A DNA stretch of 64,000 bases from Macrostomum hystrix (Eukaryota > Animalia > Platyhelminthes): assembly GCA_950097015.1 (NCBI GenBank), contig CATNEN010000005.1, positions 3,968,001 to 4,032,000 on the forward strand, in the 5' to 3' direction. Below the pieces are notes generated by a model. That model ran no database searches and was not told where the DNA came from. It worked only from the letters and a program-made list of their open reading frames with translations. Position numbers and translations under genes: made by a program. Shown here one piece after another: positions 32,823-61,199 of this stretch. How positions within the stretch are numbered: position 1 is the first letter of the stretch; every line of letters begins with the position of its first letter.

Positions 32823-34072
32823 CTTCTTGAGTACTTACGAGCTTTGCCAGGAGAAGCGAAAATATCTTGTTTACTATTTTAATTTTGTTGCTATGCAAAT
32901 GAAAATAATATAATAAGTAACAAAATTCTGACAATCTGACAGTTGCAAGGATGCACTCTGTTCTCTTTCTCCAAGAAACGACAAAAATTTTGCTTTAAAA
33001 AGCATACAAGATTGTTGCAAACTGGTTACTCAAACATATATTGTTTTGTTCAAGAAGCATACATTTTGTCTTGTGAAAGTATAGCATCTTCGTTACTAAT
33101 AGTAGTATATTATATAAAACAAGTGTGAACGAAATAGAAGGGAAGGAAATATAGGATTGGTCACGAGAAAATTCTGTGCGAATAATTTTGGTTTTTCTTC
33201 GAACACACAATCCCCTCGTTATAAACGACAAAAAGAATCACAAAATGGTCGAGAGAACCGTGTTAGCTCGAATATTATAGAAAAAAAATAAATATAAGGA
33301 ATATCCTTAATCTGTGAAGTTTATTCTAACTTGCGGGCTGTGAACTTAAATAGAAGTTCAAATCGATGAGCATGTACGGCAAAGATTTTCGCCAACGAAG
33401 AATAGAAATATAAGTGGGGCCCTCACTAGGCAGTAGATGAATAAATATATAATAAACATATATATTAGTAAACGTTTGCTTTGTTAAATTTTTACTGATT
33501 TTTAGCAGTAAAAGACATGCAGAAGTATGTAAACAGCAAAACTTTGTCACGAGACAATGCTGTCCTAGAGTTCGGAGAGTATATTACTTTTGGTGTGTGT
33601 GTCAATGACCTGCAAGTATCGATTGTTCATGAGAAGTAATTTAGGGAAGTAACTTGCGACAGATAACAAGACATTGCTGTGGGCAATTTGGTGTCTTTAG
33701 ACCCGCAGCCAGCGAGGAGGCAATTCTGCCCATTTGGCACACACTCGCACTTGGGTGTACATTTTCACTTTAAACACATTGTGGGCCTCAGGCGCGCACA
33801 AGCCCTCTCTCCGTGGCTGCGTCCCAAATAAGAGTGACGCGAGAATGGAGTCTTTGTACGCCTTAAACTGCTCACCCACTCAACCCCTTGAGAAATTTAT
33901 TTTAAAAAACAGGATTTAACAGGATAAAAACAGGATTCGCCATAGAAGAAAGAAGAAATCGGCCTAAAAAAGATGAACAGCTACTTAGTTATCAAAGTGA
34001 GTATTTTCTTGTCAAAGTTTTCAGTCAGCCAGTCGGTTGGAGAAATTTCGAAGCATTTGATCCTGTGTACGG

Positions 34073-37000
34073 TCAGGCGCTACGCTGAGCCAGCTGCGTC
34101 TCCAGCTGCTCGATTCGTTCGTCGCCGACGCCTCCGTTGTTCTCCAGACTGACGGTGCGAAGACCGTTGCGAGAGGCGCTCTGCGCGATAGAGTCGCACG
34201 CTCGGTCAGTCAGGCGATTGCCTTCGAGGTCGAGACTTTCCAGAGTTCGATTCTGACCCAGGCCATCTAGCAGGGCAGCCAGAGCCGAGTCAGTCAAGTC
34301 GCAATAGTCGAGCATGAGCGACTCCAGCTGAGTGTTGGCCCGCAGAGCTCTGCCAAGACCGGCCCAGGCCGCCTCCGAGAGGCCACGGCTGGCAGTCAGC
34401 TCCAGGGCTGCTAGGGGCGGGTTCTCGGCCATCAAGCCTGCCAGCTGCTGCAGACCTTGGTCAGTCATGCCTGTGGCGCCGAGGTCAATCTGAAGCGTTG
34501 AAATGGTTGTTTTGTCGGCGTGCATATAGGTTAAGAATTAATGACGAGTACTTTAAACATTAATATTTCAGTTCGTATATTTCCAGGAGAACTGGTTCTG
34601 GCTCTGCAGTTGGTGACACTAGACCCGCAGCCAACGAGGATGCGATTCTGCCCATTCCACTCACTTCTGCGCACTGTACACGCACACAGACATTGTTTGC
34701 AGGCACACTCACAGGGTGCGTACATCGTCATCGTCAGGCAGTGTACACTCTCACTGTGCCTTGGAGGTTGGCTATCATTTAAGGACAAGCACTAAAGCCT
34801 TCTCTCTGCGACTACGCCCCAAATGAATGTGGCCTCGCCGCGGAATCGAGCTCAGGGACCTTGGTACGAGAGGCAGACGTGTTAGACCGCTACCGCTGCC
34901 TAAGTTTTAGCCTCTCACCCACCCCCAAAGTTGGACGCATTAAAACTCTCGATGCGTAGAAAAAGGGATACGATTGGGCCATAGACAGGAAGTTCCACCG
35001 AAGAAGACAGCATCTTTTTAGAACAGCAGGCTCACATGGTTCAGGTCACAATGGATGAATTTTGTTGAAAAATAACTGACATTGCATTAGCGAGATGGGA
35101 CAAAAGGAAGTAGCAATTAAAAATGTTTAAGCACCTACCGTCTGGATAACATTTGAATTTGAACGAAATCTCGTCCTCAATCCTTTGACCAAAGCGTAGA
35201 TGCCATCGTCGCCAACTGCGTTGCCGTGCAAATTAATATTCTCCAGATTGGGCCAGCCAGACAGTCGCTCGGCAATTACCGAGGCAGCCCTAGGCCCGAT
35301 ATTGTTATTGCCAAAGTTCAGGTAGATAAGGCTGCTGTAGCCAGCTAGAGCTTCCAGCACTCGAATAGCCTGACTGTCCGTCAGCTGACAGTTGCGCAAT
35401 GCGACATTGTCGTAAGCTTTGGCTCGCTCCGGTTTGCTGAGCTCCTTGAGGAAGAGCTCGAACTGTCAATGGGGACGATGGTTGTAAATAATGCACTGTT
35501 GAGGCGGTGATTACTGTAGCTTGTTTGCGATGACTGCATTGTGATAAATCATGTATTAAACAATGATATTTAAAGTGAATGACTGTACATCTGGGCCAGC
35601 TTTCTCGTATGCTACTTGAATTAGCCATGTTTGTTTTATTCATATCTTGAAATCTTTAAATGGCATTTAAATGAGATTGAATAAGATTTTGCAGGTCTTA
35701 TTCATATGGTCCTATATGCACAATGAATTCGCAACAAAGAACTAATAAAGAAGCATCCGCTGAATATAAAGTACGAGCGAATATATTAGTAGACATAAGT
35801 AGTATGCAACGTAGGAAATTCTAAAGCGAACATAAATTGGATTCAACTAATTATTTTCCAAAGAAAGCTGCTGCATTGTACGAGCATAAAAATATTAATT
35901 CGTTCCTAAATATCTGGACCACAGTGACGTCATCCAAGCTTGTGTAAAATAACAAAATAACTTTTTTACATTTTGAAACTTCATTAGCACACGGATATAC
36001 GAGTATTAGACTTGATAAGTTTCTTGGGTATAATATATGCACAAAAATTTACATTTTCGCGTTCAACAACATTTTTGGTGTGAAAAAACATATTTAACGG
36101 ATCAACCGATTATTCAAAACTATATCATGCTTTGGTGTTCGATAGTGTAAGAGAGTGTTTAGGTACAGTAGTCGATAAAATGCAGTGTCTTCTTATTGTT
36201 TAAGTCGAGAAATGGTAAATTTTTTACATTTTTTATGACATTTTTTATCTAAGTTAATTTTTTACCGAAGTTAAATTTTCATGAAGTCATAATAGTAATA
36301 ATAATTGATGAAACCTGCCCAACTGGGCCAGATGTGCAGCTATTGCGCGGTGCATCTGAAGTCTGCGTACGGCTGTTCAGTCCATGGACTTGGGGGACGC
36401 CAAACCCACCCTCAATTACTCCAGCTGATGAACTGAAGCTATATGTAGAGTTAAGTGTCTTGCTAAAGGACAAAAATTGTCCTAATGTGACCTCCAAGTC
36501 CTGAGTTCGACGCTCTAACCACTCGGCTATATGCATTCTGCTTCGTTTCAAAGCCTTGACTTTGTACCTAGCTAGTCTTCGTGACAACGGTGCTTCAATG
36601 TGCACCAAATGTGAATTGCAAGAGGAAAATTGCGTTCTGCACCTCGAAATAAACGTGATGCGCTTCATTTCAAATCAATACAAACCTTCCTTGCAACTAT
36701 CGAATAAAATTTGTTAACATTAAAGAGAAAATACAGAACAGAAGCTAAATGTTATAAAGTATAAAAGTGCGAAAATAACGATTGAGCACAGCGAAATATG
36801 ACAGCGATTTGATGCAGAAGACGCTAATTTTTTAATCGGAGATAAAACTTACCGTCTGCAAAAGAAAAACGAACGTTGTTTCATGGAAAGAAAGTTTTTA
36901 GCGCGAGTTAAATAGTTCTCTGCAGTATTTCTGCTACGTTTTAGGGCACTTTCTCTACTTTAAGTAATACTAGTTTACGAATGCAAGAAAATTAATTATA

Positions 37001-40000
37001 GTATGGATTTAGTCACGACAGCACTTCAAAGGTACAGCGCAGGTAAAGTAAAAAATGAAACAGTGCAAAATGCTCATCGTTTTATTTACTGTTTTTAATT
37101 TTCTGTGGGTCGAGCAAGTATAAACTAACTAGACTATGTAAGCGAGGCATAGTTTACATATAATTTATTCTCGTATTTACACTCATTTAAACTAATTAAA
37201 ACTTGTACTTGTACTTCTAATTTATACTTATAGTTCCTAATTTTCGCGATTGAAAAATAACAGTTTCTCACCTGCTCCTCCGTCAGTTTAGTATCGAACA
37301 CCTTGACGGCCTTATCATCGTCTAGAAATAGTTCGCGAACTTTGCCAGTGCGCGTCTCGGGCAGACCGATGTCGTCTGGCTGAATTGACCCGCTGCGCAT
37401 TCGGCTCTGTCGCTGCCTCGCCGAGTCGTCATCCTCGGCTGGCGTCTCCGTCTCGCTGCCGGACGATGTTTCGCTTTCAGCTTCGGTTGATTCTTCCACA
37501 GATGAACTGCTCACTTCGTCCGATTCAGTATCAGTTTTGCTTGAGACGCTGGCGACGTCAGATAGCTGAGGAGTTGTGGTTGTGCCGCTTGCCGTGTTTG
37601 ACGGCTTGTCGGCCACGCTCGCACCCCCGATTGTTGAGGTTGTAGCTTCGGTGGTAGTTGTGGTGGCAGCTCCACCTTTTAGGGAAGCTTCACCGCCTGC
37701 TGTAGCGGTGGTGGCAGCGGTGGGAGCGGCTGCGGCGGCTTCTGAACGGCCAGCAGACGATGGCTGAGAATCTTCGTGCTTCGATTCGTCGCTGCTGTCA
37801 CCCTCTTCTTGAATGGCTGCGAGCAGAGTGTACCTGTTGTTCTCCCTCGTGAACCACGTGCTGCCGGGGAATTTATGGGTCACATTTCGCTGCAGATCTT
37901 CGACTTCCACCTGGAGAAGAGAGCAAAGAGTGCAAAGTTTCACGACTAATGTCATTCGTTTCGTTTTACTCGCCGAAGGTTTCAGCCGAAGGACCTCGGC
38001 ACAATTCGAATCTATCCCCTACTAGCTTACATGCGACAATAGCCAGTTGTCCTGCTCGTACTGCGCATCTGTCCACAGACGTATTTTACTGATTGCGCCA
38101 AGGTCCGGCGAGCTTATCAAGAATTCGTCAGTTCTAAAATAAATAATTTCGATGGTGAAGGAGAAGTTTAGCTTGAGCTTAGTTGATAAGTTACATTGAG
38201 AAAAAAAATTATTAAGTTTGTTCCTACCGGCCACTCTGAAACTTATCGCCTCGCTCATTTTTAAACGTCCTGACGTCTGTTTCGCCTAGATCTCCGCACA
38301 GAGTGATTGACACTGCGGCGTGTGTACCAGCGTTTTCAACCGAATCCGTCACAAATCGCAGCTTGTAGTCACAGAGACCTGTTTAACAACAGGGTTGTGA
38401 AAATTTAGGGCAGGTGTTTCGGGGCCGGGATTTTGGGGCAGGGTTTGTGAGGCAGGGATTTTGGGGCATGGGTTGTGAGGCAGGGGTATTGGGGCAGGGG
38501 TTGTGAGGCAGGGGTTTTGGGGCAGGGGTTGTGAGACAGGGGTTTTTGGGAAGGGGTTGTGAGACAGGGGTTTTGGGGCAGGGGTTGTGAGAAAGGGGGT
38601 TTTGGGGCAGGGGTTGTGAGGCAGGGGTTTTGGGGCAGGGGTTGTGAGGCAGGGGTTGTGAGGCAGGGGTTTTGGGGCAGGGGTTGTGAGACAGGGGTTT
38701 TGGGGCAGGGGTTGTGAGACAGGGGTTTTGGGGCAGGGGTTGTGAGACAGGGGTTTTGGGGCAGGGGTTGTGAGGTAGGGGTTTTGGGGCAGGGGTTGTG
38801 AGGCAGAGTTATTTGACATTGGATCGTAAAGCTGCAACTGGGGAGCTCGGGGTTGTGGAATCGCGTTTGTGATTCTGGATTGTTTTTGTTAGGACTTGCT
38901 GTAATTATTGGGCTACGATGCTAAATAATTAAGGCTACCTACCCTTCTCCTGAGCGGCCTGTTTCTCCTTCTGTTCCTGCTCAATTCGAAGCTCCCTCTC
39001 TTCCTGTTCCTCTTTCTCGCGTCTAAGCTGCTCCTCGCGCTGTCGTTGAGCTTTCTCTTCATCGCGCTTTCTGGCTGCTTCCTCCTCGTCACGCTTTCTG
39101 GCCTCCTCTTCCAGCTGTTTCCATCTCTGATCCTCAGCTTCCTCAGCTTCATCTTCTTCATCGCTAAGTAACGTCGGCTTCTTCTCCTGGCTAGCAGCTG
39201 CTTTCGATGTCGTTGCTTCTGCTTCGTCCTCGGAACCTGTATTAAGTGATAACATTTAGCTAAAGGTTTTTTTGAATTTTTTGTCGAAATCCTTGGTGGG
39301 ATTTTTCCGAGAAACTGCAAGCACCCACCCCACGCCAATGACCCACCCCACGCCAATCACCCACCCACGCTATTCTGCACCCACCCACGCCCAGCATCCA
39401 CCCAACGTAAAGCACCCTCCTCACTTCAAGAACCCACCTCAGTCTAATCACCCACCGCATTCCAAGCCAAACACACACCCGCACCAAGCACCCACCCCAC
39501 ACCTCGAAGCATCGCGGTTGGTATGTGCAAAACAAGATTTATTGATTTGAGCATACCAGAGTCGGACTCCTCAGAGAAGCTGGAAGCTTTCATTTCCTTT
39601 TTCTCGCCCGCACTTTTGTTGCGCCTGTTTTCGTCATCTGAAACAAAATTTGTCAAGTTGTCAAGTTCAGTAAATTTGTTTTTTTAATGATCGATTCAAA
39701 GGGTGCTAAAAACGATAGTCGTCGTAATCACCTGAATCATTATCGAAAGAACTGTTGCTACTAAAAGAACCGCGCCTCTTGATTTCGTCTGAAAAATGCG
39801 ATTGTTTGTAGCAAGTGAAAAATTGCCTTAGCGTAAAAAACGAATTTGTCTTGGCGTAAAGCTTGCAAGAAATCAATATTTACCTTTGCGGGTATCTCCA
39901 CTGTTGGAATTCTTCTGTGGTGACTCTTCTGCAAGAGGACATGTGGGTTTGCGTATAGGTCATACTTAGAGGTTATAATGCAGGTATTATTTTTGTACCA

Positions 40001-43000
40001 TAGAAATTTAGGCCAAAGCCTCATTTCCTGCGCGAGGGACGGGGTATCGGGGCGTTGGGCGTCGCCCCACCCATGACCATAGACGATTTGTTTTTCGAGA
40101 GAATCTTATTAGTTGCTCTGTAGAAAATAGGAAGTACGAGTTTTTGCTGGGGGTCTGCGCAACGATAAGAAATTCTGGGCAGATTATAGCTCGTATATCC
40201 TATGTGAGTGCGTGTTTGCGTATTGTACCCGTGTGTGCTCAGGAGTCAGCCTCCTTACTGGCTGCGGTTCTGATCTGCCACAAAACAATCTACCAGTGCC
40301 CACATACATTTTTATGGTATTTTAATCGAAAGAAACTGCAATCAGCAATATTGTGAAGACAGCAATCAAGTGAAGTGAAATTACCAATATCGGGTGCATC
40401 ATGCACTGAAACTTCAGGGTCCTTAATGCGCTGCTGCTGTTGGTGATCTTTCTGTTGTGGCTGTTGTTCTGTGAACAAGTAAACAAATGAAAATGGAAAG
40501 TTCTGGTAATAAAAATATTCACGATAACAGTGAAACAATTAAAACAAATTTGTGTACAATAGCAACGTGCTTCAAAGTACAAAGTATTCCGCGTGAAGTT
40601 TTAGTGAAGCCTTAAAAAGTATACACCGTTTATTACAATTGATACTTTTAACTGTAAATAAATAAAATCAAATATTTTTACAAGATAGGTGATTTCGCTT
40701 AGATATTATAAACAAATTTACTAGGGAAAGATTTAGATAGCATTAGTTACTTAGAAACACTAGTGAAAAACAGGTCCTTTAAAGAGATCAATGTGTACAT
40801 ATTATTCAATATGTACATTACTCGCATTATTTTTCATGCAACTGAAGGCTGCGTACGGCTGTTCTGTCCATGGACTGGTGGGACGCCACACCCACCCACA
40901 ATTACCCCGACTATTGCTGGCACCCATATACAGATTGCAGCTTTTGGAGTCGAAGTCTCCAAAGTCGTGAGTTCTACACTCAAACACCAAAAAAAATAAA
41001 CGGATCAAGATCGATAAACTATTTTAAACTACATCTAAAACTTAAGGGCCAGATGTACAGCTTCCGACAGCTGTTCAGTCCATGGACTGGGGAAAACAGT
41101 CCCCAGTTACTCTAATTTCAATTTTACAGCTGGGTGAACTAGAGCAGTATTGATGGAAATTTTATTCCTCAAATTTTCTTTAGAAATATTAGAATACATT
41201 CTGAACAATAACTTTTCCGTGATTAAAGAGAACGTGCTTGGTAGTGTTTAGTGCGCCATAGAAGACCACTACATAGAAGTTTATTACAGTATTCTACTAC
41301 TATAGGCTACCTTCACTTGCACCGTATAGCACAGCCTTGGCAGCGGCAATGTCGCTTTCAAAATCATCGCCACCTTCTTCATCCTCATTGTCTGTGTCGA
41401 ACTTCGGCCGGGGAACTTTCGTTGGTTTCACAATTGGAGTGCACGAAATTAATGCTTTTTATGATAATTTCCTCGTTAAGTTTGTTAATTTTGAAATAAT
41501 TTGCAGATTAATTAAGTAGTTTATTATACCGTCATCGACCAAAATACGAGCGTAGTAGTTATTTTCATTTTTGAACAAATCTAATTAATTAACCATTGGT
41601 TGTGAAAAATTACAACGAAAGTTTTGTTAGCCGTCTAAAATTTTGTCACTGCAAAAAAAGTTTTTTAAAACGATCACTGTTAGATATTTCAGATTAAAAT
41701 GTTTAACTAAAACATGTTTTCTATTAGAAATTTAGTTATAAAAATACAGATTTCTTATAGTAAGCAACTTTCGGTTTAAAAAATCCGGAAATTTCGTTTA
41801 TTTTAAACAATTATTGCGTGACAAAAATACAACAAATATTTCTTAAACTCTATATGGATTTTTTGTAATCAATAATCAATAATCGTAATCAAATTAATAA
41901 AACAAATAATTGTTTACTCACCAGGAGTATCGTGTTCCGGCGAGCCCTCGATCTTGAAGTTGACAACTTCTTCATCTTCCTCCTCGGACTCTTGGGAGCG
42001 GTTGCCTTCGCTGGAGACTCGCTGAAAAAATGCAGACGTGGAGTTTTTACGGAATTAAGTAATGTCATTGAATTCCGATTAACTAGGTCTGTGCGTAGTT
42101 AAAAAGATAAATTCTACCCACTTTTCGTCTATGTTGCGCCTCGTCGTCAGATTCGTTATCCGATTTGGCAGCTAAAATAGAAAAATAATGATAAGGCAAT
42201 TCGACCAGGTAAAAACTAAATTATGTTCATGCAGATTTAAAAAATAAATTAATTACAAGCTGCACAACGCTCTTGTCGACTCTTTTGCAGCCATCGATCG
42301 AAGTGGAACACCCAGCGTTTGCCGTCTTGCTGCTCAACTGTGACGGTATCAACGTACCAACCAGTCGAGATGCCACCTTCCACCAGAAGTCTGTCAATGG
42401 TTTAATTGATGGGATCAATTAATCTATGATGAAGTGGGAAGCTCAGATGATAATTTAAAATTAGCGTTTAAATATCTGCCACCCCGTTCCAGGCACCCAC
42501 CCGTCTCTAAGCATCCACCCCACTCCAAGCACCCACCCCACTCCAAGAACCAACCTCTAAAAAAATAATGTTTATGTTAGTAAGAGGGCTGTGGATACCC
42601 ATCACACACTCAAACAGGATGTACATCTGCCCTGACTTTCTTATCATCACTCTCACTGTGCCTTGGAAGTTAGCTCTGGAGGGCCTAAATTGCACAAGCG
42701 GTGTCTCCGCTGTTGCGCCTCAAATAAATGTAGCCTTGCCGCGGAATCGAGCTCTGGCTAGGCGCAAGCGCGATAGACCGATCGTGCAACCACCCCTTGC
42801 CGCGCAACCACCCCACGCCGAGCAACCACCCAACGCCGAGCAAACACACCATGCCGAGCAACCACCCCACGCCGAGCAACCACCCCACGCCGAGCAACCA
42901 CCCCACGCCGAGCAAACACCCCACGCCGAGCAAACACCACGCGCCGAGCAAACACCACGCGCCGAGCAACGACCCCACGCTGAGCAACCACCCCACCCCA

Positions 43001-49000: not shown

Positions 49001-52000
49001 CTTTATAATATTATAAAATACAGTTGCCTGTTCGTCTGTTTAAATTTTTTGCTGAATCAGGCTAAAATTATCACCATGACGAGCATTAGTCCGGAAACTT
49101 TTGCAACACCCCTCGTGGATGTATATTTATTAAGAACATTTTCGAGGAATTCGGTGCTTTCACTACCAAGAAAATAAATAGCGACTCAAAAGGTAAGGGG
49201 AGGCCTGAGATTGAGTACAAGTACCTGATGCCTGCCTGCTACGGCTCATGGCAGAGGAGGCTCTACCAACGCCGTCACCGACTTCAACAACTGCTGAAGC
49301 TGTGGAAGCCGACATTGGCCTCTTAGAAGCCTTTGAAGATTTCGAAGTCAAGCTTCGACTGCGGCGACTAGCTGGACGCGAGTTTGTTGTCGAAGCCGCA
49401 GAGGCTAGGAAAATTAATCCGTATCGTCGATAGAAATGCAATATACGTTTCTCTAAATTAATGTACTAAATGCTAGCAGTAGAAAGACTATCCAATTTTA
49501 CCCATTGGGGAAAGACCGAATGGTATTTCAAATACCCACTGCTTACATCACGATAGCTCCCAAAACAAATGTCAGATTTTCGTAAAAGTCAACCTTATGG
49601 ATCAAAATATTTATTGATATTCTTCCCGTACCGACTGCCACGAACGCAGCATCGACCAGTTCATTTTCCGTCCAACCTATCGACCTGTGAATTTGCTTGG
49701 CTTCGATTATATCGTGTGAGAAAACCATTGGAAGCACCATATCAGGGCCCTTTCAAGGTCATCCAATCCACATCCGCCCCGCCGACACAATGACCCTGGA
49801 GATCAAGGGCAAACCTCAAGTAGTCTTGATAGAACGCATCAAACCGGCGCGTCTGCCGGATTCTGCACCTTGGACACGCTCAATAGCTGCCAATTCAAAC
49901 CCTGTGGTCAGCCCAGTTTTGCAAGTACAACAGCGCCCCGTAAAAAGCGTCCGTTTTAATGACAATGCAACTGTTCTTACTCGTTGAGGGGGGAGTACTT
50001 GTAGCGTCTCAAATGAACTTAGTTATTTGAGACTTAGTTACGACTCCAACTTTCTTTTATTTCCATAAACAACCCCACTTATTCCACCAAGCAATACTAA
50101 CCTTCCCTTTTTCCCATAGATTTTCTGTACTCAGCTCAACCAAATAAAGCCGACCACGGGGGCTAAGGCTCCCATTCTTAACCCTGCTAACCGAAATACA
50201 AATTCATCGCCTTAGCTTAATCTGTTGTGGCTGAGAGCCACACGCCCTTTGCGATGAACTAACTTTCAAAGCTGTCAAACTTCAGCAAAGTCGAGATATC
50301 CAGCGATTCTAGTCGAAGACCCTAGTGACCCTAGAATCGTTGAATATCTCGACGATGCTGGTGCTTTGTTGTGCTTCTGTAAGTTGCTTCATCGGATCGA
50401 GCAGAAAATTGAAGCCCTAAATATGTATTTTCATGAAAATTAGTTCAATATTTTTGTTGTCCAGAACCCTAATTTGAGTACGAGTACATAGTATGCATTC
50501 GGAATTAATTTTTAATCGAACTATAGTAGTCTTCTAGGGAAGCAAAGAAAACGTGTTCGACACAAATTTACACTTTAAATTAGTGCGAGAATCGTTCCGG
50601 GACAAAAACTAACAAACACGCATGCACACACTGCACGCGTATACAAACATAGAGACAAATGCTCATCAGAAACCCATACACAAGGCCTATAGGACGAATC
50701 AAAGGAAGATTTATAATGCGACGCGTGAGACTGACAGACAGAAAAAGTACTCTCGCTTCAGTGGCTCAAGATAATTGCTGCGCATATTTCCAGATAATGA
50801 ACACACACCTGTTCTCATTTGAGCATTTGGTTTTCTATGATAAACAAAATATAGGAAAAATGCTTGACAAGAAAATCACTGCTGTAGATTGGATTGCATC
50901 AAAATTGTCTAGATAATTATTGTACTTTTACACGACTTTATCACTCCTGAATATATATCAATCCCGAATATTTATTAATCCTGAATATTTATCAATCTAA
51001 AATATTTATCAATACCGAATATTTATCAATCCTGAGCATTTATCAATCTCGAATATTCATCAATCCTGAATATTTATCAATCCTGAGCATTTATCAATCT
51101 CGAATATTCATAAATCCTGAATATTTATCAATCCTGAATATTTATCAATCTAAAATATTTATCAATACCGAATATTTATCAATCCTGAGCATTTATCAAT
51201 CTCGAATATTCATCAATCCTGAATATTTATCAATCCTGAGCATTTATCAATCTCGAATATTTATCAATCCCGAATATTTATTAATCCGGAATATTTATCA
51301 ATCCTAAATCTTTATAAATTCTGAAACTTTATCAAACCCAAATATTAATCAGTCCTGCATTTATAATTTTTTTTGTCGAAATCTGCTAAAAGCATTATAC
51401 GAATTTAGGAAAAAGACAAGTCTGACCGTGATTAAATACAAAATTAAATTTTTACTGAGTAGAATCAAATAACATACTTTATCGCATGAATCGGTGAAGC
51501 CATTATGTGTTTCTGTGAATCATTTTCAATTTAAGTGATTCGCTTTTTTGCGCAAGCTATTTTGAAACTACTCGTAAGCCGAGTAAAAAACACATATTCA
51601 GTCTAAATACCTGCTCTATTGCCATCTTTGCCACCGGATTCCGTAACAAAATCTGAGCTAAAGCTTTCATTATCATCGGCATCGGAATCTAACACCGAAA
51701 CCTCCGGTACAGATGGTTTCTGGTTGGCAATCGATTCTGTTTTATCCTGCCTAATATCGTTATCCGATGGTGTTCGATGTACTTTTTGCGCCGCAACATT
51801 GTCCGGAAGTACATTTATGTCGGAGCAATTTTGTGACGCCTCTTGGGAAGCAGTTCTGTCGATAGTTTTCTCCGACGCCAGATCCTCTTGTGCGGGGATC
51901 TCTGTTTTAGCTTCTGACGATTAAAAATTAATAGTTTTTTTACTTTTTTGAATGCACTATTGTTACCTATTGCATTGGAGGGTTAGTGGCAGAGTGGTTT

Positions 52001-55000
52001 AACCCCCTTGCATTTCGCACCAAGGTCCCTGAGCTCGATTCCGCGGCGAGGCCACATTCATTTGGGGCGTATTTGGCAAGATAAGGCTTGGGGGCTTGTG
52101 GTGCAATTTACGAACTCGAGGGCCAACCACCAAGGCCTGCGGCTTTCTGTAATAACCATCTTTATCAAACAAAACAATTATTAATAATTGATTGCACTGC
52201 ACCAATTGGGCCAGAAGAGCAGCCGACAGCACAGCCGCAGCTATTGCGCGGCGCATCTGAAGACTGCGTACGGCTGTTCAGTCCATGGACTGGGGAGACG
52301 CCACACCCACCCTCAATTACCCCAGCTAATGCAGGTACCAATTTAACAGCTGGGTGAAGTGAAGCAATGCAGAGTTAACTGTCTTTCTAAAGGACACAAA
52401 TTGTTCCGGTGGAGTCGGGAATCGAACCACCGACCTCCAAGTCGAGAGTCCGACGCTCTAACCACTGGGTTACAACCCACCATCTTATCAATGTTTCACA
52501 AAAAACTGTAAAACCCACATTAACAGTAGAACTACCAAGGGGGGGGGAATTTCCCCCCCTGACAATTTTTTTGCTGCACCCGAACGGAACAATGCAAGCA
52601 CACGAAACTCAAGAACACGGGCCAACTTTTTGTTGCGCATCTTCTGAAACAAGAATCAAGTCGCCAGCTCTTCAGACCGTCGAGATATTCAATGTTTCTG
52701 GCCGAAGGTCCGATTTTTCCCATAAGAGCTAGTGTATTTCATACACCCCTATTCACGAATTCGCACTGCGCCTCAGTGCGGCCTTGCCAGGCCTTCAAAA
52801 TTTATCAGCATGTCACTCGAGTGTGCCTGCATCATCTCCGTCTTCGGTGGTCACCTACCTTTATCTAGACAGACTGCTGGACCTTCAAGAGATACAACAG
52901 GTGGAACTAGGCCACTATGGACACCCTGACGTGAATTTCTCAAATTTCAATGCTCAAGCCAAAATATTAGGCGCAGCTCAACCACAGGACACCATCGCCT
53001 AGTCTGTCAACCAATCAGTCACCACCCAACGCCGTTAGCATTCGGGCGCTGCCAAAAAAAATCCCCCCCTTGGTATAAAAACGGGCGGCAAAATGGCTTG
53101 GTAGTCCTACTGTTAAAGGGTTAGCTACAACTTAACAGCATCAATTGATTAGTGTTGTTAAAGTTATATTGTCCTGTTGTACTCTAAAACAATTACCGAA
53201 ACCATTTATCACCTGTTTTTGGCCTCCTTCGTCCCACCGGTTGCGAGCCAGTCTTCTCCTTCTTGCTGCGACCGTCTTTCATCTGCTCCTCAACTTGACA
53301 CCTGAAGGTTTATTTAGAATTGCCCAAGTTAAAACCGGATTCTCTGTCTTAAATATCCACATACTTTTTTAGCAATAGAAAGATCACGGCTATTCCAAAT
53401 GCCCACATTTTTGCTTTTCCTGCATTTTAATTTTACAAAATACTCAACCAATCGCTATGAAAATGCTGAACACTGTCTAAAAGTTTCCGCTCTATCCGAT
53501 GAAACAGTTTATAGAAGCACGAAACAGCGGCATCGTCGAGATATTCAACGATTCTCGTCGTGGTCGATTCTCGTCGTTGTCTTTCTACTGGAAAGCTACT
53601 ACTTTTAGTAGTGCAAATGTAAAATCTAATAAAAGAGGAACCAGTATCCACAGCCGATTAAGAGGGGTCGGTGGCAGAGCGGTTGACGCGTTTGTCTCTC
53701 GCACCACGATCCCTAAGTTCGATTCCGCGGCGAGGCCACATTCATTTGGGGCGCAGCCGCGGAGAGAAGGCTTGGGAGCTTGTCGTGCAATTTACGCCCT
53801 TGAGGGCCAACCTCAAAGGCACAGTTAAATGTACACTGCCTGACGATGAGAAAGTCAGGGCAGATGTACACACCTGTGTGAGCGTAGGCCTGCGTACAGT
53901 ATCTGTGTGCGTGTGAGCTCAGGAGTCAGCGAAATGGGCAGAATTGCCTTCTCGCTGTCTGCGGGTCTAGTGTCACCAAATGATGTGCCATTGCCCGCAG
54001 CCCTCCTGCAATCAATATTATTATTATTATCCATAGCCGACCTGTAGCACGGTGCAGCCTCCGAGACGCTGACGAAACCGAAATGGCCAGTCTTGGAGCC
54101 GAGACGGACGCCCGTGCGGTGCTTGTACTCGCAGCAGGCGCTGACTCGCGAGTCCATAACGCCATCGATGTATAACGACAGGGAGAACGGGTAGCCGCGG
54201 TGCCGTCTGCTGACGAAGGTGAAATCCTCTGGAAGCAGGGGAAAATTTAAACAATTGGGGATTTAAAGAAGAAGATCAAGCAATTGGGATTCTAGATATT
54301 TAGAGATTTAAACAACCGATAAGTGTAAGAATTAGAGAACGAGAAAGGTGAGGGAATTGGATAACTGGAAGGTGTGAGGATGGTAGAACGGAAAGGTGTG
54401 ACTAACGGACAGAATTGACTCCTCACTGACTTCAGTCAGTCAAGCTAATACTGAAATGCTCACGACTACTCTGTGAGTATTATTAAAATTTTGAGAGAAC
54501 TGAGAAATTTAGAAAATACCAAAGTAGAGCAGGACTCACCGCCCGGTTTCACAAGGCCGAAGAACACTCGTAGAGTGTTGCCACCCGAGTGCTGCTGCAT
54601 TACTGTGACCTCCTGGCCCTCCTGGCCCGGCCCGTCGTGCGGTATCTTCAACGCCGGTCCGTAGTAGTGCAGCGTGACCTTGCACAGGCTCTGATAGGAG
54701 GCCTGCTTGTCGAAGGCCGGCTCGGTGCGGTGGAGCTTCAGCCTACCGACTCGCCGTTTCCGCTCCTCGCCTCGATCGTCGGCTGCGTCGCTTTCGTCAT
54801 CCTCTCCTCGTGACTCGGCTCTGGGTCTGGCCGCCGATTTCGGTCGACCGCTGCGCGAGCGACCTTCTCGGAGTCGGCGTCCGGGAGATGACGAATTTTC
54901 GGCGCTCCTTCGACGTCGTCGTTGAGACGAGCCACCGCCGCCGGCACGGTGCGAGCTGAGATTCGAACCCCCTCCGCGACCACTTTCATTGCGGCGCATT

Positions 55001-57432
55001 GCCTCGAGGATGTTCGCGTACTCCTGCAGTGCGACACTATCAAGTGTAATCAGGTGCTTGGAGTCTATTTCTGAGTGCGGAAATTGACGTCGAAGTCGAC
55101 GACGTTGTACAGTGTCCGGATGCGGTGGAAGGCCGGATGGCTCCGGCTGCGGTTTGAAATTGGTTTACAGAGAGTCAAAAGCGAATTTGGATTGGTTTTT
55201 GTTGGTGTAAAAACTCTCCTGTATCAAATCGGATCAGCTATTGCGATTGGTCACCCAAATCTGTTCACCTCATTGTCTCCTTCAGCTTCTTCGGCATCGC
55301 CACCGATGCGATTTGGTCGCTGCTTTCTTCGGCGAATTCCGGACGACGTCCCAGCTCCGGGATCCAACAGCGGCATCAGGTCCTCGTCGCCACGTCGGCT
55401 TCGTTCGTTCTGTTTTGTTTCGAAGAAAAGAATGACCATGCTTTGAAACAATTGAAACAGCAAAAATAGTTTTCGTGTTTATCTTCCACGATTTACACTC
55501 ATTTCGTGAATTTTTGAGGACGTTCAAGTCGTCAAATTCTTAAGTAACCAGGATCAGTGAGAACCTTTTCAGGAGTGACTTTCATCGTTTGTGACAAGTT
55601 TTCTGGTAGCATGATTGCACAGTGACTTAAGTAAAATATTAACCGAAATGGTAGCATTGACAAAACAATGATTGAAATTATAGCAGTACAACAACCATAT
55701 TGACAAAACACGCATGCAGCGGCCTTTCAATTGTCAATCGGTTGGTACCAAAACAGCAGCAGGTGGTGTACGCTCGTCTGGACTAGACAACGACGATACG
55801 TCGCCTGAGCGGTGCGTCTCAACTGGTTGGTGCATTGTGGGCGATCGTAAGCCTCCATAATAACTCCTACGCAGCTGCATCGGTGTCAGCAGAGCGGGCT
55901 GGCGCTGTTGAAGTCGCCGATGCTCGCTAGTGATGGTTGGCGCAGTCTGAGCTGCCAGCTGAGCCAAGCTGGTTGGCGTCAGTTGAGACAATAGGCCGTC
56001 GCGATCTTCGGCTTTGGCCTGACCCTTTTTAGTTGTTTTAGACCATTTTTCTGCTACTTTTTTTACATTTTTACATTTGGAATTGACGGATTCTGAAGGT
56101 GGGAAGTACTCGTAAAACAAGGTGGAGATAATTATGAAACAGGAAGGTGTGAGAATGGTGGAACAGGAAGGATTGAGAATGATAAAACAGGAAGGTGTGA
56201 GAATGGTGGAACAGGAAGGATTGAGAATGATAAAACAGGAAGGATTGAGAATGATAAAACAGGAAGGTATGAGAATGATGGAACAGGAAAGATTGAGAAT
56301 GATAAAACAGGAAGGTGTAAAAATGATGAAACAAGGTGTGAGAATAAGTAAATGAGATATTATTGCATAAATATTATTTCTAATACACTTCAGACGAAAG
56401 CACTGCGTTTTCTGTAAGCGAGCATTCACACGTTGATATTCACGCAACACAATATAATCCACTGATTTGAACCCACAAAACGATGATTAGTTCAGCTTTA
56501 GTTATTTTGACTAACCTTGATTCGCCTGACATGCTCCATCTTGGCAATTTCCTCAAGTTTGCGTCTTATGTCAACCTGACGTTTTCGTTCCAAATCAAGC
56601 GACTTGTGCACAATGGCCTGGGCCAGCATGTCCCTGACGTGTCGCTTGTGTTCCTTCCGGGCCATCTTGAGCCGATAAACTGGCTCGGGTACAACCTCAC
56701 CAGACCTGGTGATCTGCAGGGCATGCCATTTTTGTTAATTAAAGTGTCCTACTTCAGAGAAGCATAATTACGATTCTTAATAAGTTCGATTTTCTTTCCA
56801 AACAGCCTTACCAATCCAGCCTTTACTAGATGACGCCATTTAGACTTGTTGTTAAAATAGCCAGCCAAATGCTCATCCTTTAGGCTGTTGTACTGGGCTA
56901 ATGGCCTAAAATAAGAAAATTACAGAATGCACCGCTAAAAAATCATAATTTTATAAAATCTTGCTTTTCATTTACTAGCCATGGTATAAAACAGTAATGT
57001 AATAGTTTTAAATACATCCACATTCGGCAAGAAGTAATAGATTGCTGATTTTGCTATTTGTGAAATTAATAAGATTTTATCGATCTTATATGGGCGTTGC
57101 AGCCACTAAGCATCGGCATGTCCTGACTCCTGTTAGACTATTTGTGTATTAATTATGCTAGTTGCTGCATTTTGCAATGATATGTTTACACAAAATAGAA
57201 TAAAACTACTACAGATATGATTGTCAGTTCAAAACTAAACATGATTAAACAGAATACAATACAAACCGATTTTAGTTAATATGTAATAAAATGTTATAAC
57301 GCGAATTCAAAGAATAGAAAAAGCAAACAAGCTTATTTTAATTAGGCTAGATATTTTTAAGCAGCCATAAAAGCTTAATAATTAAAGCAAAAATCATTAT
57401 AATAAAGCATACCCAGTTTCTGGCTTTGCCAT
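34073..57432 (-). CDS. ERICH3: ERICH3-like (DUF4590) protein with four PLAT/LH2 domains and C-terminal LRRC73-like LRRs, about 1745 aa
   Basis: 26 exons (minus strand): 57432-57413, 56905-56812, 56713-56516, 55409-55269, 55146-54540, 54228-54042, 53301-53213, 51913-51611, 47435-47376, 46072-45778, 45472-45339, 44387-44156, 43670-43537, 43355-43094, 42390-42257, 42171-42122, 42021-41922, 41415(or 41454)-41311, 40468-40385, 39637-39557, 39236-38943, 38378-38228, 38133-38031, 37910-37272, 35462-35139, 34489-34073. All junctions are GT-AG and in phase. The N-terminus (PLAQYNSLKDEHLAGYFNN...ITRSGEVV...AQAIVHKSLDLER) and VMQQHSGGNTL...FTFVSRRHRGYPFSL...SACCEYKHR...GHFGFV..CYRC match my recollection of ERICH3. 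PLAT motif YxVTVxTxDxxGxGTD recurs. LRR end: LESLMLDYCDL...RTLESLDLEGNRLT. The symbol applies to the N-terminal part only. Confidence 0.8.
34600..34890 (-). mobile_element. SINE S1 copy in the last intron of the ERICH3-like gene
   Basis: Reverse-strand match including ctcgccgcggaatcgagctcagggaccttgg. Confidence 0.85.
36290..36532 (-). mobile_element. SINE family C copy
   Basis: Colinear with 52176-52474, with the tRNA-like head at the 36500-36532 end. Confidence 0.8.
38408..38806. repeat. 28-bp G-rich minisatellite (caggggttttggggcaggggttgtgaga)n
   Basis: About 14 units in intron 38379-38942. ORF 38349..38837 is a repeat artefact. Confidence 0.95.
39320..39500. repeat. Degenerate C-rich repeat (cacccacc...)
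   Basis: Imperfect units of about 18 bp, similar in character to the 42783 array. Confidence 0.6.
42600..42760 (-). mobile_element. SINE S1 diverged copy
   Basis: atgtacatctgccctgactttctt..catca..cactgtgccttgg...ttgccgcggaatcgagctc. Confidence 0.75.
42783..43062. repeat. 18-bp minisatellite (gccgagcaaccaccccac)n
   Basis: About 15 units in intron 42391-43093. It generates several overlapping repetitive ORFs. Confidence 0.93.
43714..44112 (+). mobile_element. Complete tRNA-derived SINE (family D) with target-site duplication
   Basis: tRNA-like head (A box tagctcagtcagt, B box ggttcgactcc), (att)n tail, flanked by ttcaccatta at 43704-43713 and 44113-44122. Confidence 0.92.
44445..45280. repeat. 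Compound satellite: 18-bp (aggggaactgttagacag)n then 22-bp (gaggaactgttagacagaaaga)n
   Basis: Shared core gaactgttagacag. Period changes from 18 to 22 near 44780-44810. Fills most of intron 44388-45338. Confidence 0.96.
45545..45725. repeat. 22-bp tandem repeat containing CRE and CCAAT
   Basis: Unit atgacgtcactccaatcgcaac. TGACGTCA at 45551, 45573, 45595, 45617, 45639, 45661 and 45705, TTACGTCA at 45683. Confidence 0.95.
47028..47350 (+). mobile_element. SINE S1 near-full copy
   Basis: gggggtgagtggcagagagg...gagctcgattccgcggcgagg...gcctcctcgctggc...tattat tail. Confidence 0.9.
47960..48180 (+). mobile_element. SINE S1 copy
   Basis: caaggtccccgagctcgattccgcggcgaggccacattcatttggggcgcagccgcggagagaagg... 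Confidence 0.85.
48349..49115 (+). mobile_element. Internally deleted mariner (Tc1/mariner) element
   Basis: 33-bp TIR cgagggtgttgcaaaagtttccggactaatgct at 48349-48381 and its inverse at 49082-49115 (one extra C). TA on the left flank, TG on the right. Transposase C-terminal remnant HPAYSPDLAVADFHLF...DKLIERY*KC (YSPDL motif) with an in-frame stop. Confidence 0.93.
49629..50242 (+). mobile_element. Ty3/Gypsy LTR retrotransposon 3' remnant (pol C-terminus, PPT, LTR)
   Basis: Frameshifted RVRKPLEAPYQGPFKVI / TMTLEIKGKPQVVLIERIKPA. Polypurine tract gaggggggag at 49986-49995. LTR-like TG...CA segment 50000-50242. Confidence 0.8.
50940..51330. repeat. 17-bp AT-rich satellite (gaatatttatcaatcct)n with 153-bp higher-order period
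   Basis: The variant unit tctaaaatattt recurs at 50996 and 51149 (9 x 17 bp). Confidence 0.85.
51978..52140 (+). mobile_element. SINE S1 5' half
   Basis: agtggcagagtggtt...caaggtccctgagctcgattccgcggcgaggccacattc. Confidence 0.85.
52176..52474 (-). mobile_element. tRNA-derived SINE family C, most complete copy
   Basis: Reverse strand: A box taacccagtgg, B box ggttcgattcc, then gtgtcctttagaaagacagttaactctgcattgc...cacccagctgttaaattggtacc, which resembles the conserved central domains of CORE/V-type SINEs. Other copies near 18270, 28240, 36300, 40840 and 41050. Confidence 0.8.
52514..53120 (+). mobile_element. Non-autonomous TIR element family A (piggyBac-like ends)
   Basis: Left taacagtagaactaccaag and right cttggtagtcctactgtta form a 19-bp inverted pair with 1 mismatch. 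The right end finishes aaaggg|ttag. Reverse fragments near 59490-59680 and 58850. Confidence 0.75.
53664..54030 (+). mobile_element. SINE S1 full-length copy
   Basis: A box tggcagagcgg, B box agttcgattcc, about 365 bp, (att)n tail. Flanks tatccacagccga (53645-53657) and tatccatagccga (54028-54040) form a probable 13-bp TSD. Confidence 0.92.
55734..56018 (-). CDS. Candidate alternative terminal exon of the ERICH3-like gene
   Basis: Phase-0 acceptor ggtcAG|GCC at 56018, open GC-rich frame AKAEDRDGLLSQ...VLVPTD* in frame with exon 3. Confidence 0.45.
   Translation of the reverse strand, partial: AKAEDRDGLLSQLTPTSLAQLAAQTAPTITSEHRRLQQRQPALLTPMQLRRSYYGGLRSPTMHQPVETHRSGDVSSLSSPDERTPPAAVLVPTD
56128..56345. 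repeat. 24-bp minisatellite (aaacaggaaggattgagaatgata)n
   Basis: About 9 imperfect units in intron 3 of the ERICH3-like gene. Confidence 0.9.
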
Positions 57433-57885
57433 GACAAAAACGATTAGCTGTTCCGGATTAGTGATGGATGCCAAAAGAAAATGTGCGAAAAATCGGAACT
57501 TAAATTTAAGATGAATGTCTTAGATATTCGCCTATAAACATTATGGCCTGTCACATACAAAATGAAGGTTTAAAATTAGCAATAAATGGTGGTTAAGAGA
57601 GATATTTTTTAGCTTTCTTAGTAAACGAAACAATAAAAAGATTCGCATACTGTTTTACTTGTTATATTACTCGATCTAAAAGCTTGCAATTTAAAACTTG
57701 CAAGTACAATCTTTCTATGAAAGAAATATCAATACTAACTAGGTGTCAACGAATTCATTTACCAATTTATTATTATTATTATTCAAACTACACAAAGCGT
57801 ATCTATAATAGATTCAGCCTGGTAAAGTAAAGTCCACACTCTAAGTTTCGCATAGCATTTTTTCTTCCATTAGCAAATGAAAAGT

Positions 57886-60800: not shown

Positions 60801-61199
60801 ATGTACTCAAATTGACGAGTGAAATTTTACACTAGTTTTGATATATTGACTTACTCGTATTTACTAAAACTGCAGGTGTTCCTATCCAAAGGCAATGTGC
60901 CATCTGAGCGCTACAATCTATTTATGAACATTCTGTTTAACACCACTCGCGACGCCATCGCCAAATGCATGGAGGCCAGCTATGAGCGCATCGAACTACG
61001 CGAAGCCCAACGCATGCTATTCTTCGACAGCCTGGAAGCCATGGAACGCTATCGTCAAGGCCGTGGATGGCAGCTAGCTGAACGTACCCGCGAATTCGTC
61101 TTTCAAAAGGCGCCCTCCGATGCCCAGAAGCGATTCCCGGCTGAGCGAGTCTCCGAAACCATGCTGCACTACGCTGCGGAGCTGGACAAAATTGTCTAA
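57886..61199 (+). CDS. PSMD8: 26S proteasome non-ATPase regulatory subunit 8 (Rpn12)
   Basis: Exons 57886-57996, 59964-60036, 60159-60451, 60876-61199. Motifs [55 protein letters not shown]|[18 protein letters not shown] match Rpn12. Third intron is GC-AG. An in-frame ATG at 57877 is an alternative start. Confidence 0.95.
60520..60795 (+). mobile_element. SINE S1 copy in PSMD8 intron 3
   Basis: gagctcgattccgcggcgaggccacattc...ctgacgatgagaaa.tcagggc...tattattatt tail. Confidence 0.88.

What the first reader, a model, noticed from the sequence alone, without database searches (positions are those of the whole stretch)
34073..57432. One gene fusing ERICH3/DUF4590, four PLAT domains and an LRRC73-like LRR module
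Seen: 26 exons on the minus strand chain with canonical GT-AG sites, and every one of the 25 junctions is in phase, giving about 1745 aa with no internal stop. The order is ERICH3-like N-terminus and DUF4590 core, acidic linker, PLAT x3, charged coiled coil, PLAT, S/T-rich linker, then RNI-type LRRs. Known: vertebrate ERICH3 has a long Glu-rich low-complexity tail without PLAT or LRR domains and is linked to cilia. PLAT repeats bind membranes and lipids (LOXHD1, polycystin-1). LRRC73 is a separate small gene in mammals. Inference: this may be an undescribed multidomain ciliary membrane adaptor, and possibly a Rosetta-stone hint that ERICH3 and LRRC73 work together.
Basis: partly seen in the sequence, partly recalled or inferred. 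Interest (0 to 1): 0.78.

Follow-up and report, generated by a model that had tools for sequence, protein, structure and literature searches.

The report
Flatworm ERICH3 gene with PLAT, LRR
This is one real 26-exon flatworm gene, the counterpart of the ciliary protein ERICH3. Its extra PLAT and leucine-rich-repeat domains are the usual non-vertebrate form of that protein, already present in public databases, not a new fusion.

Summary
The gene is real. On the minus strand from ATG 57432 to TGA 34073, an ortholog-guided model has 26 exons, all GT-AG, 4917 nt and 1638 aa with no internal stop. It aligns end to end (68% identity) with Macrostomum lignano BOX15_Mlig011659g1, an RNA-seq-derived single-gene model of 25 exons with the same boundaries. 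The fourth, 51611>47435, is not: the orthologous junction is 53213>47435, and the acidic ORF has no M. lignano counterpart.

The architecture is not new. DUF4590 with a C-terminal LRR module occurs in a sea anemone, molluscs, nemerteans, an annelid, echinoderms and a tunicate. DUF4590+PLAT+LRR occurs in scallops (two PLATs) and a nemertean, and DUF4590+PLAT in rotifers. The vertebrate ERICH3 proteins sampled lack the LRR. Only the count of four PLATs is special here.

The LRRC73 link could not be tested and stays a lead. The LRR is generic RNI-type, and LRRC73 was not named among the top 120 sequence hits. It does rank 3rd and 5th in an embedding search, and both proteins are reported in motile cilia.

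The joined protein was not searched in any database.

The parts
57413..57432 (-). Exon 1: start codon plus 6 codons (MAKPETG), donor GTATGC
   Evidence: Identical peptide and the same split codon as M. lignano exon 1.
56516..56905 (-). Exons 2 (56905-56812) and 3 (56713-56516): conserved ERICH3 N-terminal region, predicted as a short helix plus a long single helix
   Evidence: 94-98% identical to M. lignano and 55-70% to mollusc and nemertean ERICH3-like proteins. Helix 46-114 has pLDDT above 90 in the family model.
55269..55409 (-). Exon 4
   Evidence: Maps 1:1 to M. lignano exon 4, both 141 nt. The ORF at about 56018-55800 that my ab initio chain inserted has no ortholog support.
54540..55146 (-). 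Exon 5: basic and Ser/Arg-rich stretch, then the first third of DUF4590
   Evidence: Maps to M. lignano exon 5. phmmer matches to the DUF4590 N-part of homologs reach 1e-16.
54042..54228 (-). Exon 6: DUF4590 core
   Evidence: Pfam PF15257, E 4.2e-29, 101 bits. 100% identical to M. lignano. 382 library proteins at E <= 1e-3.
53213..53301 (-). Exon 7: end of DUF4590 and a basic stretch (CQVEEQMKDGR...)
   Evidence: Orthologous to M. lignano exon 7, same phase.
51611..51913 (-).
   Evidence: No counterpart in the M. lignano locus. Has in-phase AG and GT sites. Codon score 0.14, the top of 48 intronic ORFs but low for an exon.
47376..47435 (-). Exon 8: 20-codon acidic micro-exon
   Evidence: Orthologous to M. 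lignano exon 8 (57 nt, same phase); AYEEDFQDDDES versus TYDDDFQDESDH.
45339..46072 (-). Exons 9 (46072-45778) and 10 (45460-45339): Ser-rich lead-in plus PLAT 1
   Evidence: Pfam PLAT 9.3e-11 and 3e-3 on the two halves. Maps to M. lignano exons 9-10.
43537..44387 (-). Exons 11 (44387-44156) and 12 (43670-43537): PLAT 2
   Evidence: Pfam PLAT 1.6e-9 and 7.9e-3. Maps to M. lignano exons 11-12.
42257..43355 (-). Exons 13 (43355-43094) and 14 (42390-42257): PLAT 3
   Evidence: Pfam PLAT 9.6e-7 and 1e-4. Maps to M. lignano exons 13-14.
39557..42171 (-). Small linker exons 15-20 (42171-42122, 42021-41922, 41391-41311, 39928-39884, 39788-39732, 39637-39557): acidic and Ser-rich low-complexity linker
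   Evidence: All are in phase with GT-AG sites. Exons 16, 19 and 20 have recognisable M. lignano counterparts. Exons 17-18 are only 20-27% identical and tentative. Exons 14+15 equal one exon in M. lignano.
38943..39236 (-).
   Evidence: Maps to M. lignano exon 20; 52% identical. The composition is visible. The helix type is inferred.
37272..38378 (-). Exons 22 (38378-38228), 23 (38133-38031) and 24 (37910-37272): PLAT 4, then the S/T/A-rich linker
   Evidence: Pfam PLAT is weak on the pieces (0.04, 0.0017). The orthologous region of P0216 (1134-1244) scores 2.5e-42 with a family PLAT profile and hits lipoxygenase and polycystin-1 PLAT in the PDB.
35139..35462 (-). Exon 25: first half of the RNI-type LRR module; phase-0 acceptor
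   Evidence: Pfam LRR_6 2.3e-6. Maps to M. lignano exon 24, both 324 nt. Matches the C-terminal modules of mollusc and nemertean ERICH3-like proteins.
34073..34489 (-). Exon 26: second half of the LRR module plus stop codon TGA
   Evidence: Pfam LRR_6 2.1e-8. 74% identical to M. lignano exon 25. In every homolog the module ends at the C-terminus.
33896..33901 (-). AATAAA, about 170 nt after the stop: likely poly(A) signal
   Evidence: Pattern scan. Its function is inferred.
57877..61238 (+). Divergent upstream neighbour, a CSN8/eIF3K-like gene, which fixes the 5' limit of the ERICH3 gene
   Evidence: tblastx blocks 80-94% identical to the gene that sits head-to-head with the ortholog in M. lignano.

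Best explanation
The region holds one protein-coding gene, the ortholog of ERICH3 (glutamate-rich protein 3) in a Macrostomum flatworm, in the non-vertebrate form of that family. That form has a conserved N-terminal helix region, the DUF4590 domain and long charged or low-complexity linkers. It ends in an RNI-type leucine-rich-repeat module of about 250 residues at the extreme C-terminus. Between DUF4590 and the LRR cap the Macrostomum lineage carries four PLAT domains. Scallops have two in the same places, a nemertean has one, and rotifers have two.

Likely working (inferred, not shown): a ciliary scaffold protein. The DUF4590 domain is predicted as a C2-like beta-sandwich, and the PLAT beta-sandwiches give several weak membrane- or partner-binding surfaces. 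The charged helix and disordered linkers act as spacers. The LRR horseshoe docks a protein partner.
For: Shown:
- Domains on exon ORFs.
- A 26-exon, all GT-AG, stop-free chain of 1638 aa.
- End-to-end alignment, 68% identity, with P0216 = M. lignano BOX15_Mlig011659g1.
- 25 M. lignano exons with the same boundaries and phases.
- That annotation derives from RNA-seq transcripts cut at experimentally found trans-splice and poly(A) sites (PMC5730564).
- A conserved head-to-head neighbour.
- The same collinear order N-term, DUF4590, PLAT, LRR in scallop, nemertean and other proteins.
- The LRR module is always C-terminal, in 52 of 137 long family members.
- An oyster assembly contig of 4898 nt (Logan source; RNA origin inferred from one unbroken ORF filling nearly the whole contig) encodes DUF4590 and LRR in that one 1544-aa ORF (P0188).

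For function:
- Human ERICH3 localises to primary cilia and is abundant in airway motile cilia (PMC6848114).
- The DUF4590 model (pLDDT 80-93) matches C2 domains best, e.g. BON1 C2B at Z 7.6, rmsd 4.1, 114 aligned, and DOCK180 at Z 7.2.
Against: No transcript of this species was reachable (blank), so the junctions rest on orthology and splice-site logic. Exons 17-18 and the acidic ORF are unresolved. The C2-like fold match is at the level the tool calls common (Z below 8), and Foldseek gave nothing at E <= 1e-3. No structure of any ERICH3 relative is solved. The ciliary role is carried over from the vertebrate protein, which lacks both PLAT and LRR.
Confidence: 0.82

Rival explanations
1. Two or three mature mRNAs come from one transcription unit. 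The LRR module, or the PLAT-LRR half, is also or only made as a separate protein by spliced-leader trans-splicing to an internal acceptor. Macrostomum spliced leaders are said to end in AUG, and the acceptor at 35462 is phase 0, so a leader-donated AUG would be in frame with the 246-codon LRR part.
For: Exon 25 starts in phase 0. Trans-splicing and multi-gene precursor transcripts are frequent in M. lignano (PMC5730564). Earlier notes on this genome report leader-donated start codons (unchecked here). Mussel annotations and assembly contigs hold LRR-only products of 326-407 aa, though these may simply be 3' fragments.
Against: The M. lignano pipeline cut transcripts at detected trans-splice and poly(A) sites, yet left this gene whole. 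The fused order is conserved from Cnidaria to tunicates. No AATAAA-plus-restart signature was looked for or found inside the gene. The only candidate signal noted lies after the final stop.
Confidence: 0.1
2. This is the reader's reading: a lineage-specific, previously unseen fusion of three separate genes (ERICH3, a PLAT-repeat gene and LRRC73) that creates a new ciliary membrane adaptor.
For: Four PLAT domains is more than in any other family member seen. No paper found links ERICH3 with PLAT or LRR domains.
Against: DUF4590+LRR and DUF4590+PLAT+LRR proteins are deposited for many phyla, including the congener M. lignano. The architecture is therefore ancestral rather than a local fusion.
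Confidence: 0.03
3. The long model is an annotation artefact shared by automatic pipelines. Neighbouring genes on one strand are merged, and the true ERICH3 ends before the PLAT exons.
For: Most homologs are automatic predictions. The linkers are low-complexity and poorly conserved. A second ERICH3-like locus in the same genome shows no clear PLAT and no LRR within 40 kb.
Against: Independent pipelines and phyla give the same order. One unbroken ORF on a single oyster assembly contig carries both DUF4590 and the LRR. All 25 junctions stay in phase over 23 kb, and exon phases match between the two Macrostomum species.
Confidence: 0.05

Closest known systems
Macrostomum lignano hypothetical protein BOX15_Mlig011659g1 (P0216, 1654 aa, GCA_002269645.1 contig NIVC01000842.1)
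   Same: Ortholog: 68% identity end to end. It has the same domains and order, the same exon boundaries and phases for 24 of 25 exons, and the same divergent CSN8-like neighbour.
   Different: M. lignano exon 14 is split by an 85-nt intron here. It has no counterpart of the acidic ORF 51913-51611. The linkers differ in length.
Scallop and nemertean 'glutamate-rich protein 3-like' or uncharacterized proteins (e.g. Mizuhopecten XP_021365223.1 = P0011, Argopecten P0192, Pecten P0198, Tubulanus XP_074656719.1 = P0092)
   Same: ERICH3 N-terminus, DUF4590, PLAT, linker, C-terminal RNI-type LRR module. Scallops have one PLAT after DUF4590 and one just before the LRR, as here.
   Different: One or two PLAT domains instead of four. 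The first PLAT is triplicated in Macrostomum (PLAT1-PLAT2 42% identical in M. lignano).
Vertebrate ERICH3 (glutamate-rich protein 3; frog, crocodilian, snake, caecilian, coelacanth, lungfish and teleost sequences sampled)
   Same: N-terminal region and DUF4590 are 55-65% identical. A ciliary protein in human cells (PMC6848114).
   Different: No PLAT and no LRR module at E <= 0.01 in any sampled vertebrate protein. A long Glu-rich tail instead.
LRRC73 (small vertebrate RNI-type LRR protein)
   Same: Same LRR class (LRR_6 / LRR_TMOD-LMOD). The LRRC73 cluster is among the nearest embedding neighbours of both the mussel and the M. lignano module (rank 5 and rank 3, score 0.95). It is reported in motile cilia and rootlets (PMC12772120).
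   Different: Not named among the 120 best sequence hits of the module. Several unrelated RNI-type clusters score the same. No LRRC73 sequence was available for a direct alignment or tree.
PLAT-repeat proteins (LOXHD1, polycystin-1) and lipoxygenase N-terminal PLAT
   Same: Same domain family. The PDB hits of the ortholog's PLATs are coral and human lipoxygenase PLAT (1e-8 to 3e-7) and polycystin-1 PLAT (7e-3).
   Different: No lipoxygenase, REJ, GPS or channel part. The PLATs sit inside an ERICH3 frame.

Membership tests
ERICH3 / glutamate-rich protein 3 family | DUF4590 domain (PF15257) | tested here: met
   Exon 6 scores 101 bits, E 4e-29, against a cutoff of 27. The first third of the domain lies in exon 5.
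ERICH3 / glutamate-rich protein 3 family | Conserved N-terminal region (LAxYNSL..HLAGYFNN..RHL.KAGLI.. followed by a long helix) | tested here: met
   Exons 2-3 match family members at 1e-8 to 1e-27. 55-70% identity by tblastn.
ERICH3 / glutamate-rich protein 3 family | Orthology rather than a shared domain only: collinear full-length alignment and synteny with an annotated family member | tested here: met
   End-to-end alignment with M. lignano P0216, shared exon structure and shared neighbour. A second, more distant DUF4590 locus exists on contig 7.
ERICH3 / glutamate-rich protein 3 family | Ciliary localisation or function | not testable with these tools
   Known for the human protein only (PMC6848114).
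PLAT/LH2 domain (PF01477) | Four independent matches to the PLAT profile | tested here: met
   First halves score 42.9, 38.9 and 30.0 bits, above the cutoff of 23. The PLAT4 pieces score 15-19 bits each, below the cutoff. Four full domains at 1e-42 to 1e-44 in the ortholog with a family profile.
RNI-type LRR (LRR_6 PF13516 / LRR_TMOD-LMOD PF27087) | 28-29-residue repeats matching LRR_6, with ribonuclease inhibitor as the closest solved fold | tested here: met
   LRR_6 at 27.7 and 34 bits against a cutoff of 23.4. Ribonuclease inhibitor is the best PDB hit, at 2e-11 for the ortholog and 3e-48 for the family profile.
LRRC73 | LRRC73 proteins as nearest relatives of the module (reciprocal best hits or a common clade among RNI-type LRR proteins) | tested here: inconclusive
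   No LRRC73 is named in the top 120 of 231 hits in the right length range, though the word filter may miss it. The embedding search places the LRRC73 cluster at rank 5 and rank 3, tied with unrelated clusters. No LRRC73 sequence was obtainable for a tree.
C2 domain superfamily (for DUF4590) | Eight-stranded beta-sandwich superposable on C2 domains, well above background | tested here: inconclusive
   VIA Z 7.6 / 7.3 / 7.2 for BON1, DOCK5 and DOCK180 C2, with 105-114 residues aligned. Foldseek's best C2 hits have E about 1e-2. The tool states that Z below 8 is common.

The most novel reading that the evidence does not exclude
Ancestral ERICH3 carried its own C-terminal RNI-type LRR module, from Cnidaria to tunicates. 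The vertebrate stem lost it from ERICH3, and vertebrate LRRC73 may be that module set free by gene fission. ERICH3 and LRRC73 would then be predicted to act as a complex in motile cilia.
Probability: 0.25. Interest if true: 0.55.

Novelty: new member of a known kind. Interest (0 to 1): 0.25.

Why it matters
For this locus, the result is a clean gene model and a correct name: the ERICH3 ortholog.

More generally, the literature describes ERICH3 from the human protein only, as DUF4590 plus a Glu-rich tail. The public sequences gathered here show that the widespread animal form ends in an LRR module and, in several spiralian lineages, carries PLAT domains. That gives testable hints about what ERICH3 does in cilia: a partner-docking LRR and membrane-facing beta-sandwiches. 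It also raises a candidate vertebrate partner, LRRC73, which is itself an uncharacterised motile-cilium protein. None of this is specific to, or first visible in, this window.

Tried and rejected
1. An ab initio splice and codon-usage chain gave 32 exons and 1920 aa. It added ORFs in introns (56018-55800, 52854-52817, 50308-50264, 49404-49225, 48673-48633) that have no ortholog support, so I rejected it in favour of the ortholog-guided chain.
2. The word search with the S/T-linker exon was blank. No RNA-derived fragment of this species was found, so there is no direct junction evidence.
3. The search with the DUF4590 exon against 1.84 billion representatives returned no hit above about 70% identity. 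M. lignano P0216 was absent from the 150 listed and turned up only through the mollusc N-terminus with a region search.
4. PDB sequence searches with the ortholog and with a profile of N-terminus plus DUF4590 found no solved ERICH3 relative.
5. A weak SPMAP1-like (PF15075) match of the N-terminal motif recurs in 4 of 15 family members, with a best E of 0.013. It is too weak to use.
6. A profile of the LRR module against the PDB showed no special closeness to any axonemal LRR protein. Ribonuclease inhibitor and LRRC34 lead generically.
7. Paper searches for ERICH3 with LRRC73 or with PLAT found nothing.
8. The joined spliced protein was not submitted to any database, family or fold tool, because it has no reference. 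It was assembled only inside local scripts, to check frame and stops and to align with P0216. Full-length questions were asked of the ortholog P0216 instead.

The window is a flatworm contig, not human.
Full report
**What is there.** The window is eukaryotic. That fits what I found: the best full-length relative is a Macrostomum lignano protein at 68% identity, with conserved gene order. The window is not human.

Pfam, run exon by exon by reference, gives:
- DUF4590 at 54228-54042 (E 4e-29);
- three PLAT domains, each split into a first half (E 9e-11, 2e-9, 1e-6) and a second half (3e-3, 8e-3, 1e-4);
- a fourth PLAT split in three weak pieces;
- LRR_6 in the last two coding ORFs (2e-6, 2e-8).

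**Gene model.** A search of 1.84 billion representative proteins with the DUF4590 exon found no close hit from this genus among the 150 listed. A word search seeded with a mollusc N-terminus did find P0216, the M. lignano protein BOX15_Mlig011659g1 (1654 aa, partial at the 5' end).

I mapped P0216 exactly onto its own locus L001. It has 25 exons, all GT-AG. Each exon was then mapped onto the window. The resulting window model has 26 exons:
- 57432-57413, 56905-56812, 56713-56516, 55409-55269, 55146-54540, 54228-54042, 53301-53213, 47435-47376
- 46072-45778, 45460-45339, 44387-44156, 43670-43537, 43355-43094, 42390-42257
- 42171-42122, 42021-41922, 41391-41311, 39928-39884, 39788-39732, 39637-39557
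- 39236-38943, 38378-38228, 38133-38031, 37910-37272, 35462-35139, 34489-34073

All 25 junctions are GT-AG and in phase. The sum is 4917 nt, giving 1638 aa and a single terminal stop. Exon lengths equal those of M. lignano or differ by multiples of three, and the phases are the same. M. lignano exon 14 corresponds to two exons here, which accounts for 26 against 25. Per-exon identity runs from 100% (DUF4590 core) to 20-27% for two tiny linker exons (17 and 18), which are therefore tentative.

An AATAAA lies about 170 nt after the stop. The 5' limit is fixed by a divergently transcribed CSN8/eIF3K-like gene, which is also the head-to-head neighbour in M. lignano.

The start, the stop, the domain order and three of the four named junctions are right. 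The junction 51611>47435 is not supported. In M. lignano the counterpart of 53301-53213 is spliced directly to the counterpart of 47435-47376, and the acidic ORF 51920-51606 has no match anywhere in that locus.

An in-phase exon 51913-51611 is formally possible. Its codon usage is the best of 48 intronic ORFs, yet low for an exon. It stays an open candidate cassette exon.

**One gene or several?** I could not reach RNA of this species (blank). Indirect support for a single mRNA is nevertheless good:
- The GenBank annotation of M. lignano was built from RNA-seq transcripts that were cut wherever trans-splice or poly(A) sites were detected experimentally (PMC5730564), and it keeps this gene whole.
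- The same collinear order is found in independent predictions from other phyla.
- One oyster assembly contig of 4898 nt carries DUF4590 and the LRR module in a single 1544-aa ORF (P0188). I take it for cDNA because the unbroken ORF fills nearly the whole contig.

A residual alternative exists. The acceptor at 35462 is phase 0, so a spliced leader ending in AUG could in principle also give an LRR-only product.

**Is the architecture new? No.** Precomputed and locally computed domain content of the family shows the following:
- DUF4590 plus a C-terminal RNI-type LRR module is present in 52 of 137 family proteins of 900 aa or more. These come from a sea anemone (Actinostola), bivalves, gastropods, nemerteans, the annelid Dimorphilus, five echinoderm classes and the tunicate Styela. 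The module always ends at the C-terminus.
- DUF4590+PLAT+LRR occurs in scallops (Mizuhopecten, Argopecten, Pecten), the nemertean Tubulanus and M. lignano. Scallops have two PLATs, one after DUF4590 and one before the LRR, as here.
- Rotifers have DUF4590 plus two PLATs without an LRR.
- Many of these proteins are named 'glutamate-rich protein 3(-like)' by RefSeq.
- The vertebrate ERICH3 proteins sampled (frogs, crocodilian, snake, caecilian, coelacanth, lungfish, teleosts) have neither PLAT nor LRR.

The window therefore holds the ordinary non-vertebrate form of ERICH3. The only lineage-specific trait is four PLATs, through triplication of the first one.

I found no paper that describes this architecture. 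The ERICH3 paper I read shows only DUF4590.

**LRRC73.** The LRR module is generic RNI-type. The best solved relatives are ribonuclease inhibitor, LRRC34, NLRs and DRC5. A word search with a mussel fragment that consists of the module alone (P0169, in the right length range for LRRC73) returned family fragments, then RanGAP-, NLRC3- and RNH1-like proteins. No LRRC73 was named among the top 120 of 231 hits.

An embedding search placed a chordate 'LRRC73' cluster at rank 5 (mussel module) and rank 3 (M. lignano module). Its scores were tied with unrelated protist and plant clusters. I had no tool-given LRRC73 sequence, so there is no alignment or tree.

Three things keep the idea alive as a lead:
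- The fusion is present in non-vertebrates and the module is absent from vertebrate ERICH3.
- The LRRC73 cluster is chordate-dominated.
- LRRC73 is reported in motile cilia and rootlets (PMC12772120), and ERICH3 in cilia (PMC6848114).

**How it may work (inference).** A family model of N-terminus plus DUF4590 shows a long confident helix (residues 46-114) and a beta-sandwich for DUF4590 (pLDDT 80-93). The nearest solved folds are C2 domains: BON1 (Z 7.6, rmsd 4.1, 114 aligned), DOCK5 and DOCK180 (Z 7.3 and 7.2), and CEP120. Foldseek also lists C2 domains at E about 1e-2. This is suggestive only, because the tool states that Z below 8 is common.

A C2-like domain, four PLAT sandwiches, a charged helix, disordered spacers and an LRR horseshoe fit a scaffold that touches membrane or partners at several points and docks one protein at its end. 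The link to cilia is carried over from the vertebrate protein.

**Limits.** The joined spliced protein has no reference, so it was not searched in any database, family or fold tool. Exons were searched by reference and the ortholog P0216 served for full-length questions. The joined translation was made only inside local scripts, to check frame and stops and to align with P0216.

**Verdict.** The gene is real and correctly outlined, with one doubtful exon. The LRRC73 Rosetta-stone idea is untested but not excluded.

Noticed in passing
own genome G000 contig 7, 10691579-10694840, minus strand (loci L003, L004, L007): A second ERICH3-like locus has the N-terminal motif and DUF4590 (75% identical in the core exon). 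It shows no LRR and only one weak PLAT-like ORF (E 7e-4, at 10680797-10681087) within 40 kb downstream. It may be a short paralog without the PLAT/LRR half.
   Followed up: partly
window 35462 (acceptor of exon 25): The LRR half starts in phase 0. A spliced leader ending in AUG, as earlier notes report for this genome, would be in frame and could yield a 247-aa LRR-only protein. No RNA evidence either way.
   Followed up: no
window about 53790-53700, 52110-52000, 48070-47980, 47160-47020, 36450-36300 (minus-strand frames): A short interspersed repeat recurs in several introns. Its translations repeat the strings [17 protein letters not shown] and [17 protein letters not shown]. One copy region (intron 7) also matches two introns of the M. 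lignano ortholog at 76-82% identity.
   Followed up: no
window 56400-56100, 45300-44420, 43090-42500, 38900-38400: Intronic minisatellites give long spurious ORFs (Pro/Ser/Leu-rich, up to 250 codons) with strongly negative codon scores. The satellite noted earlier at 45545-45725 lies in intron 9.
   Followed up: no
exon 2, window 56905-56812, and family members: The N-terminal motif around HLAGYFNN..RHL gives weak, recurrent matches to Pfam SPMAP1-like (a sperm microtubule-associated protein): E 0.08 here, 0.0044 in a fish ERICH3, and 4 of 15 family members at E <= 0.1. This may hint at a shared microtubule-binding motif.
   Followed up: partly
family model m0c7d67fdbb37 (P0061), residues 203-323: DUF4590 is predicted as a C2-like beta-sandwich. 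The best matches are C2 domains from copine BON1, DOCK180/DOCK5, PLC-epsilon, NEDD4 and CEP120, at Z about 7.
   Followed up: partly
window 57877-61238 (+) and about 63965-64000: Conserved synteny with M. lignano: a CSN8/eIF3K-like gene sits head-to-head with ERICH3, only about 450 bp from its start codon, and the ribosomal protein L4 gene probably begins at the window's edge.
   Followed up: partly
proteins P0168-P0171 and P0224-P0229 (mussel and other mollusc records): Several annotations and assembly contigs encode only the C-terminal LRR module (326-407 aa). They may be 3' fragments or genuine short isoforms from an internal start.
   Followed up: no
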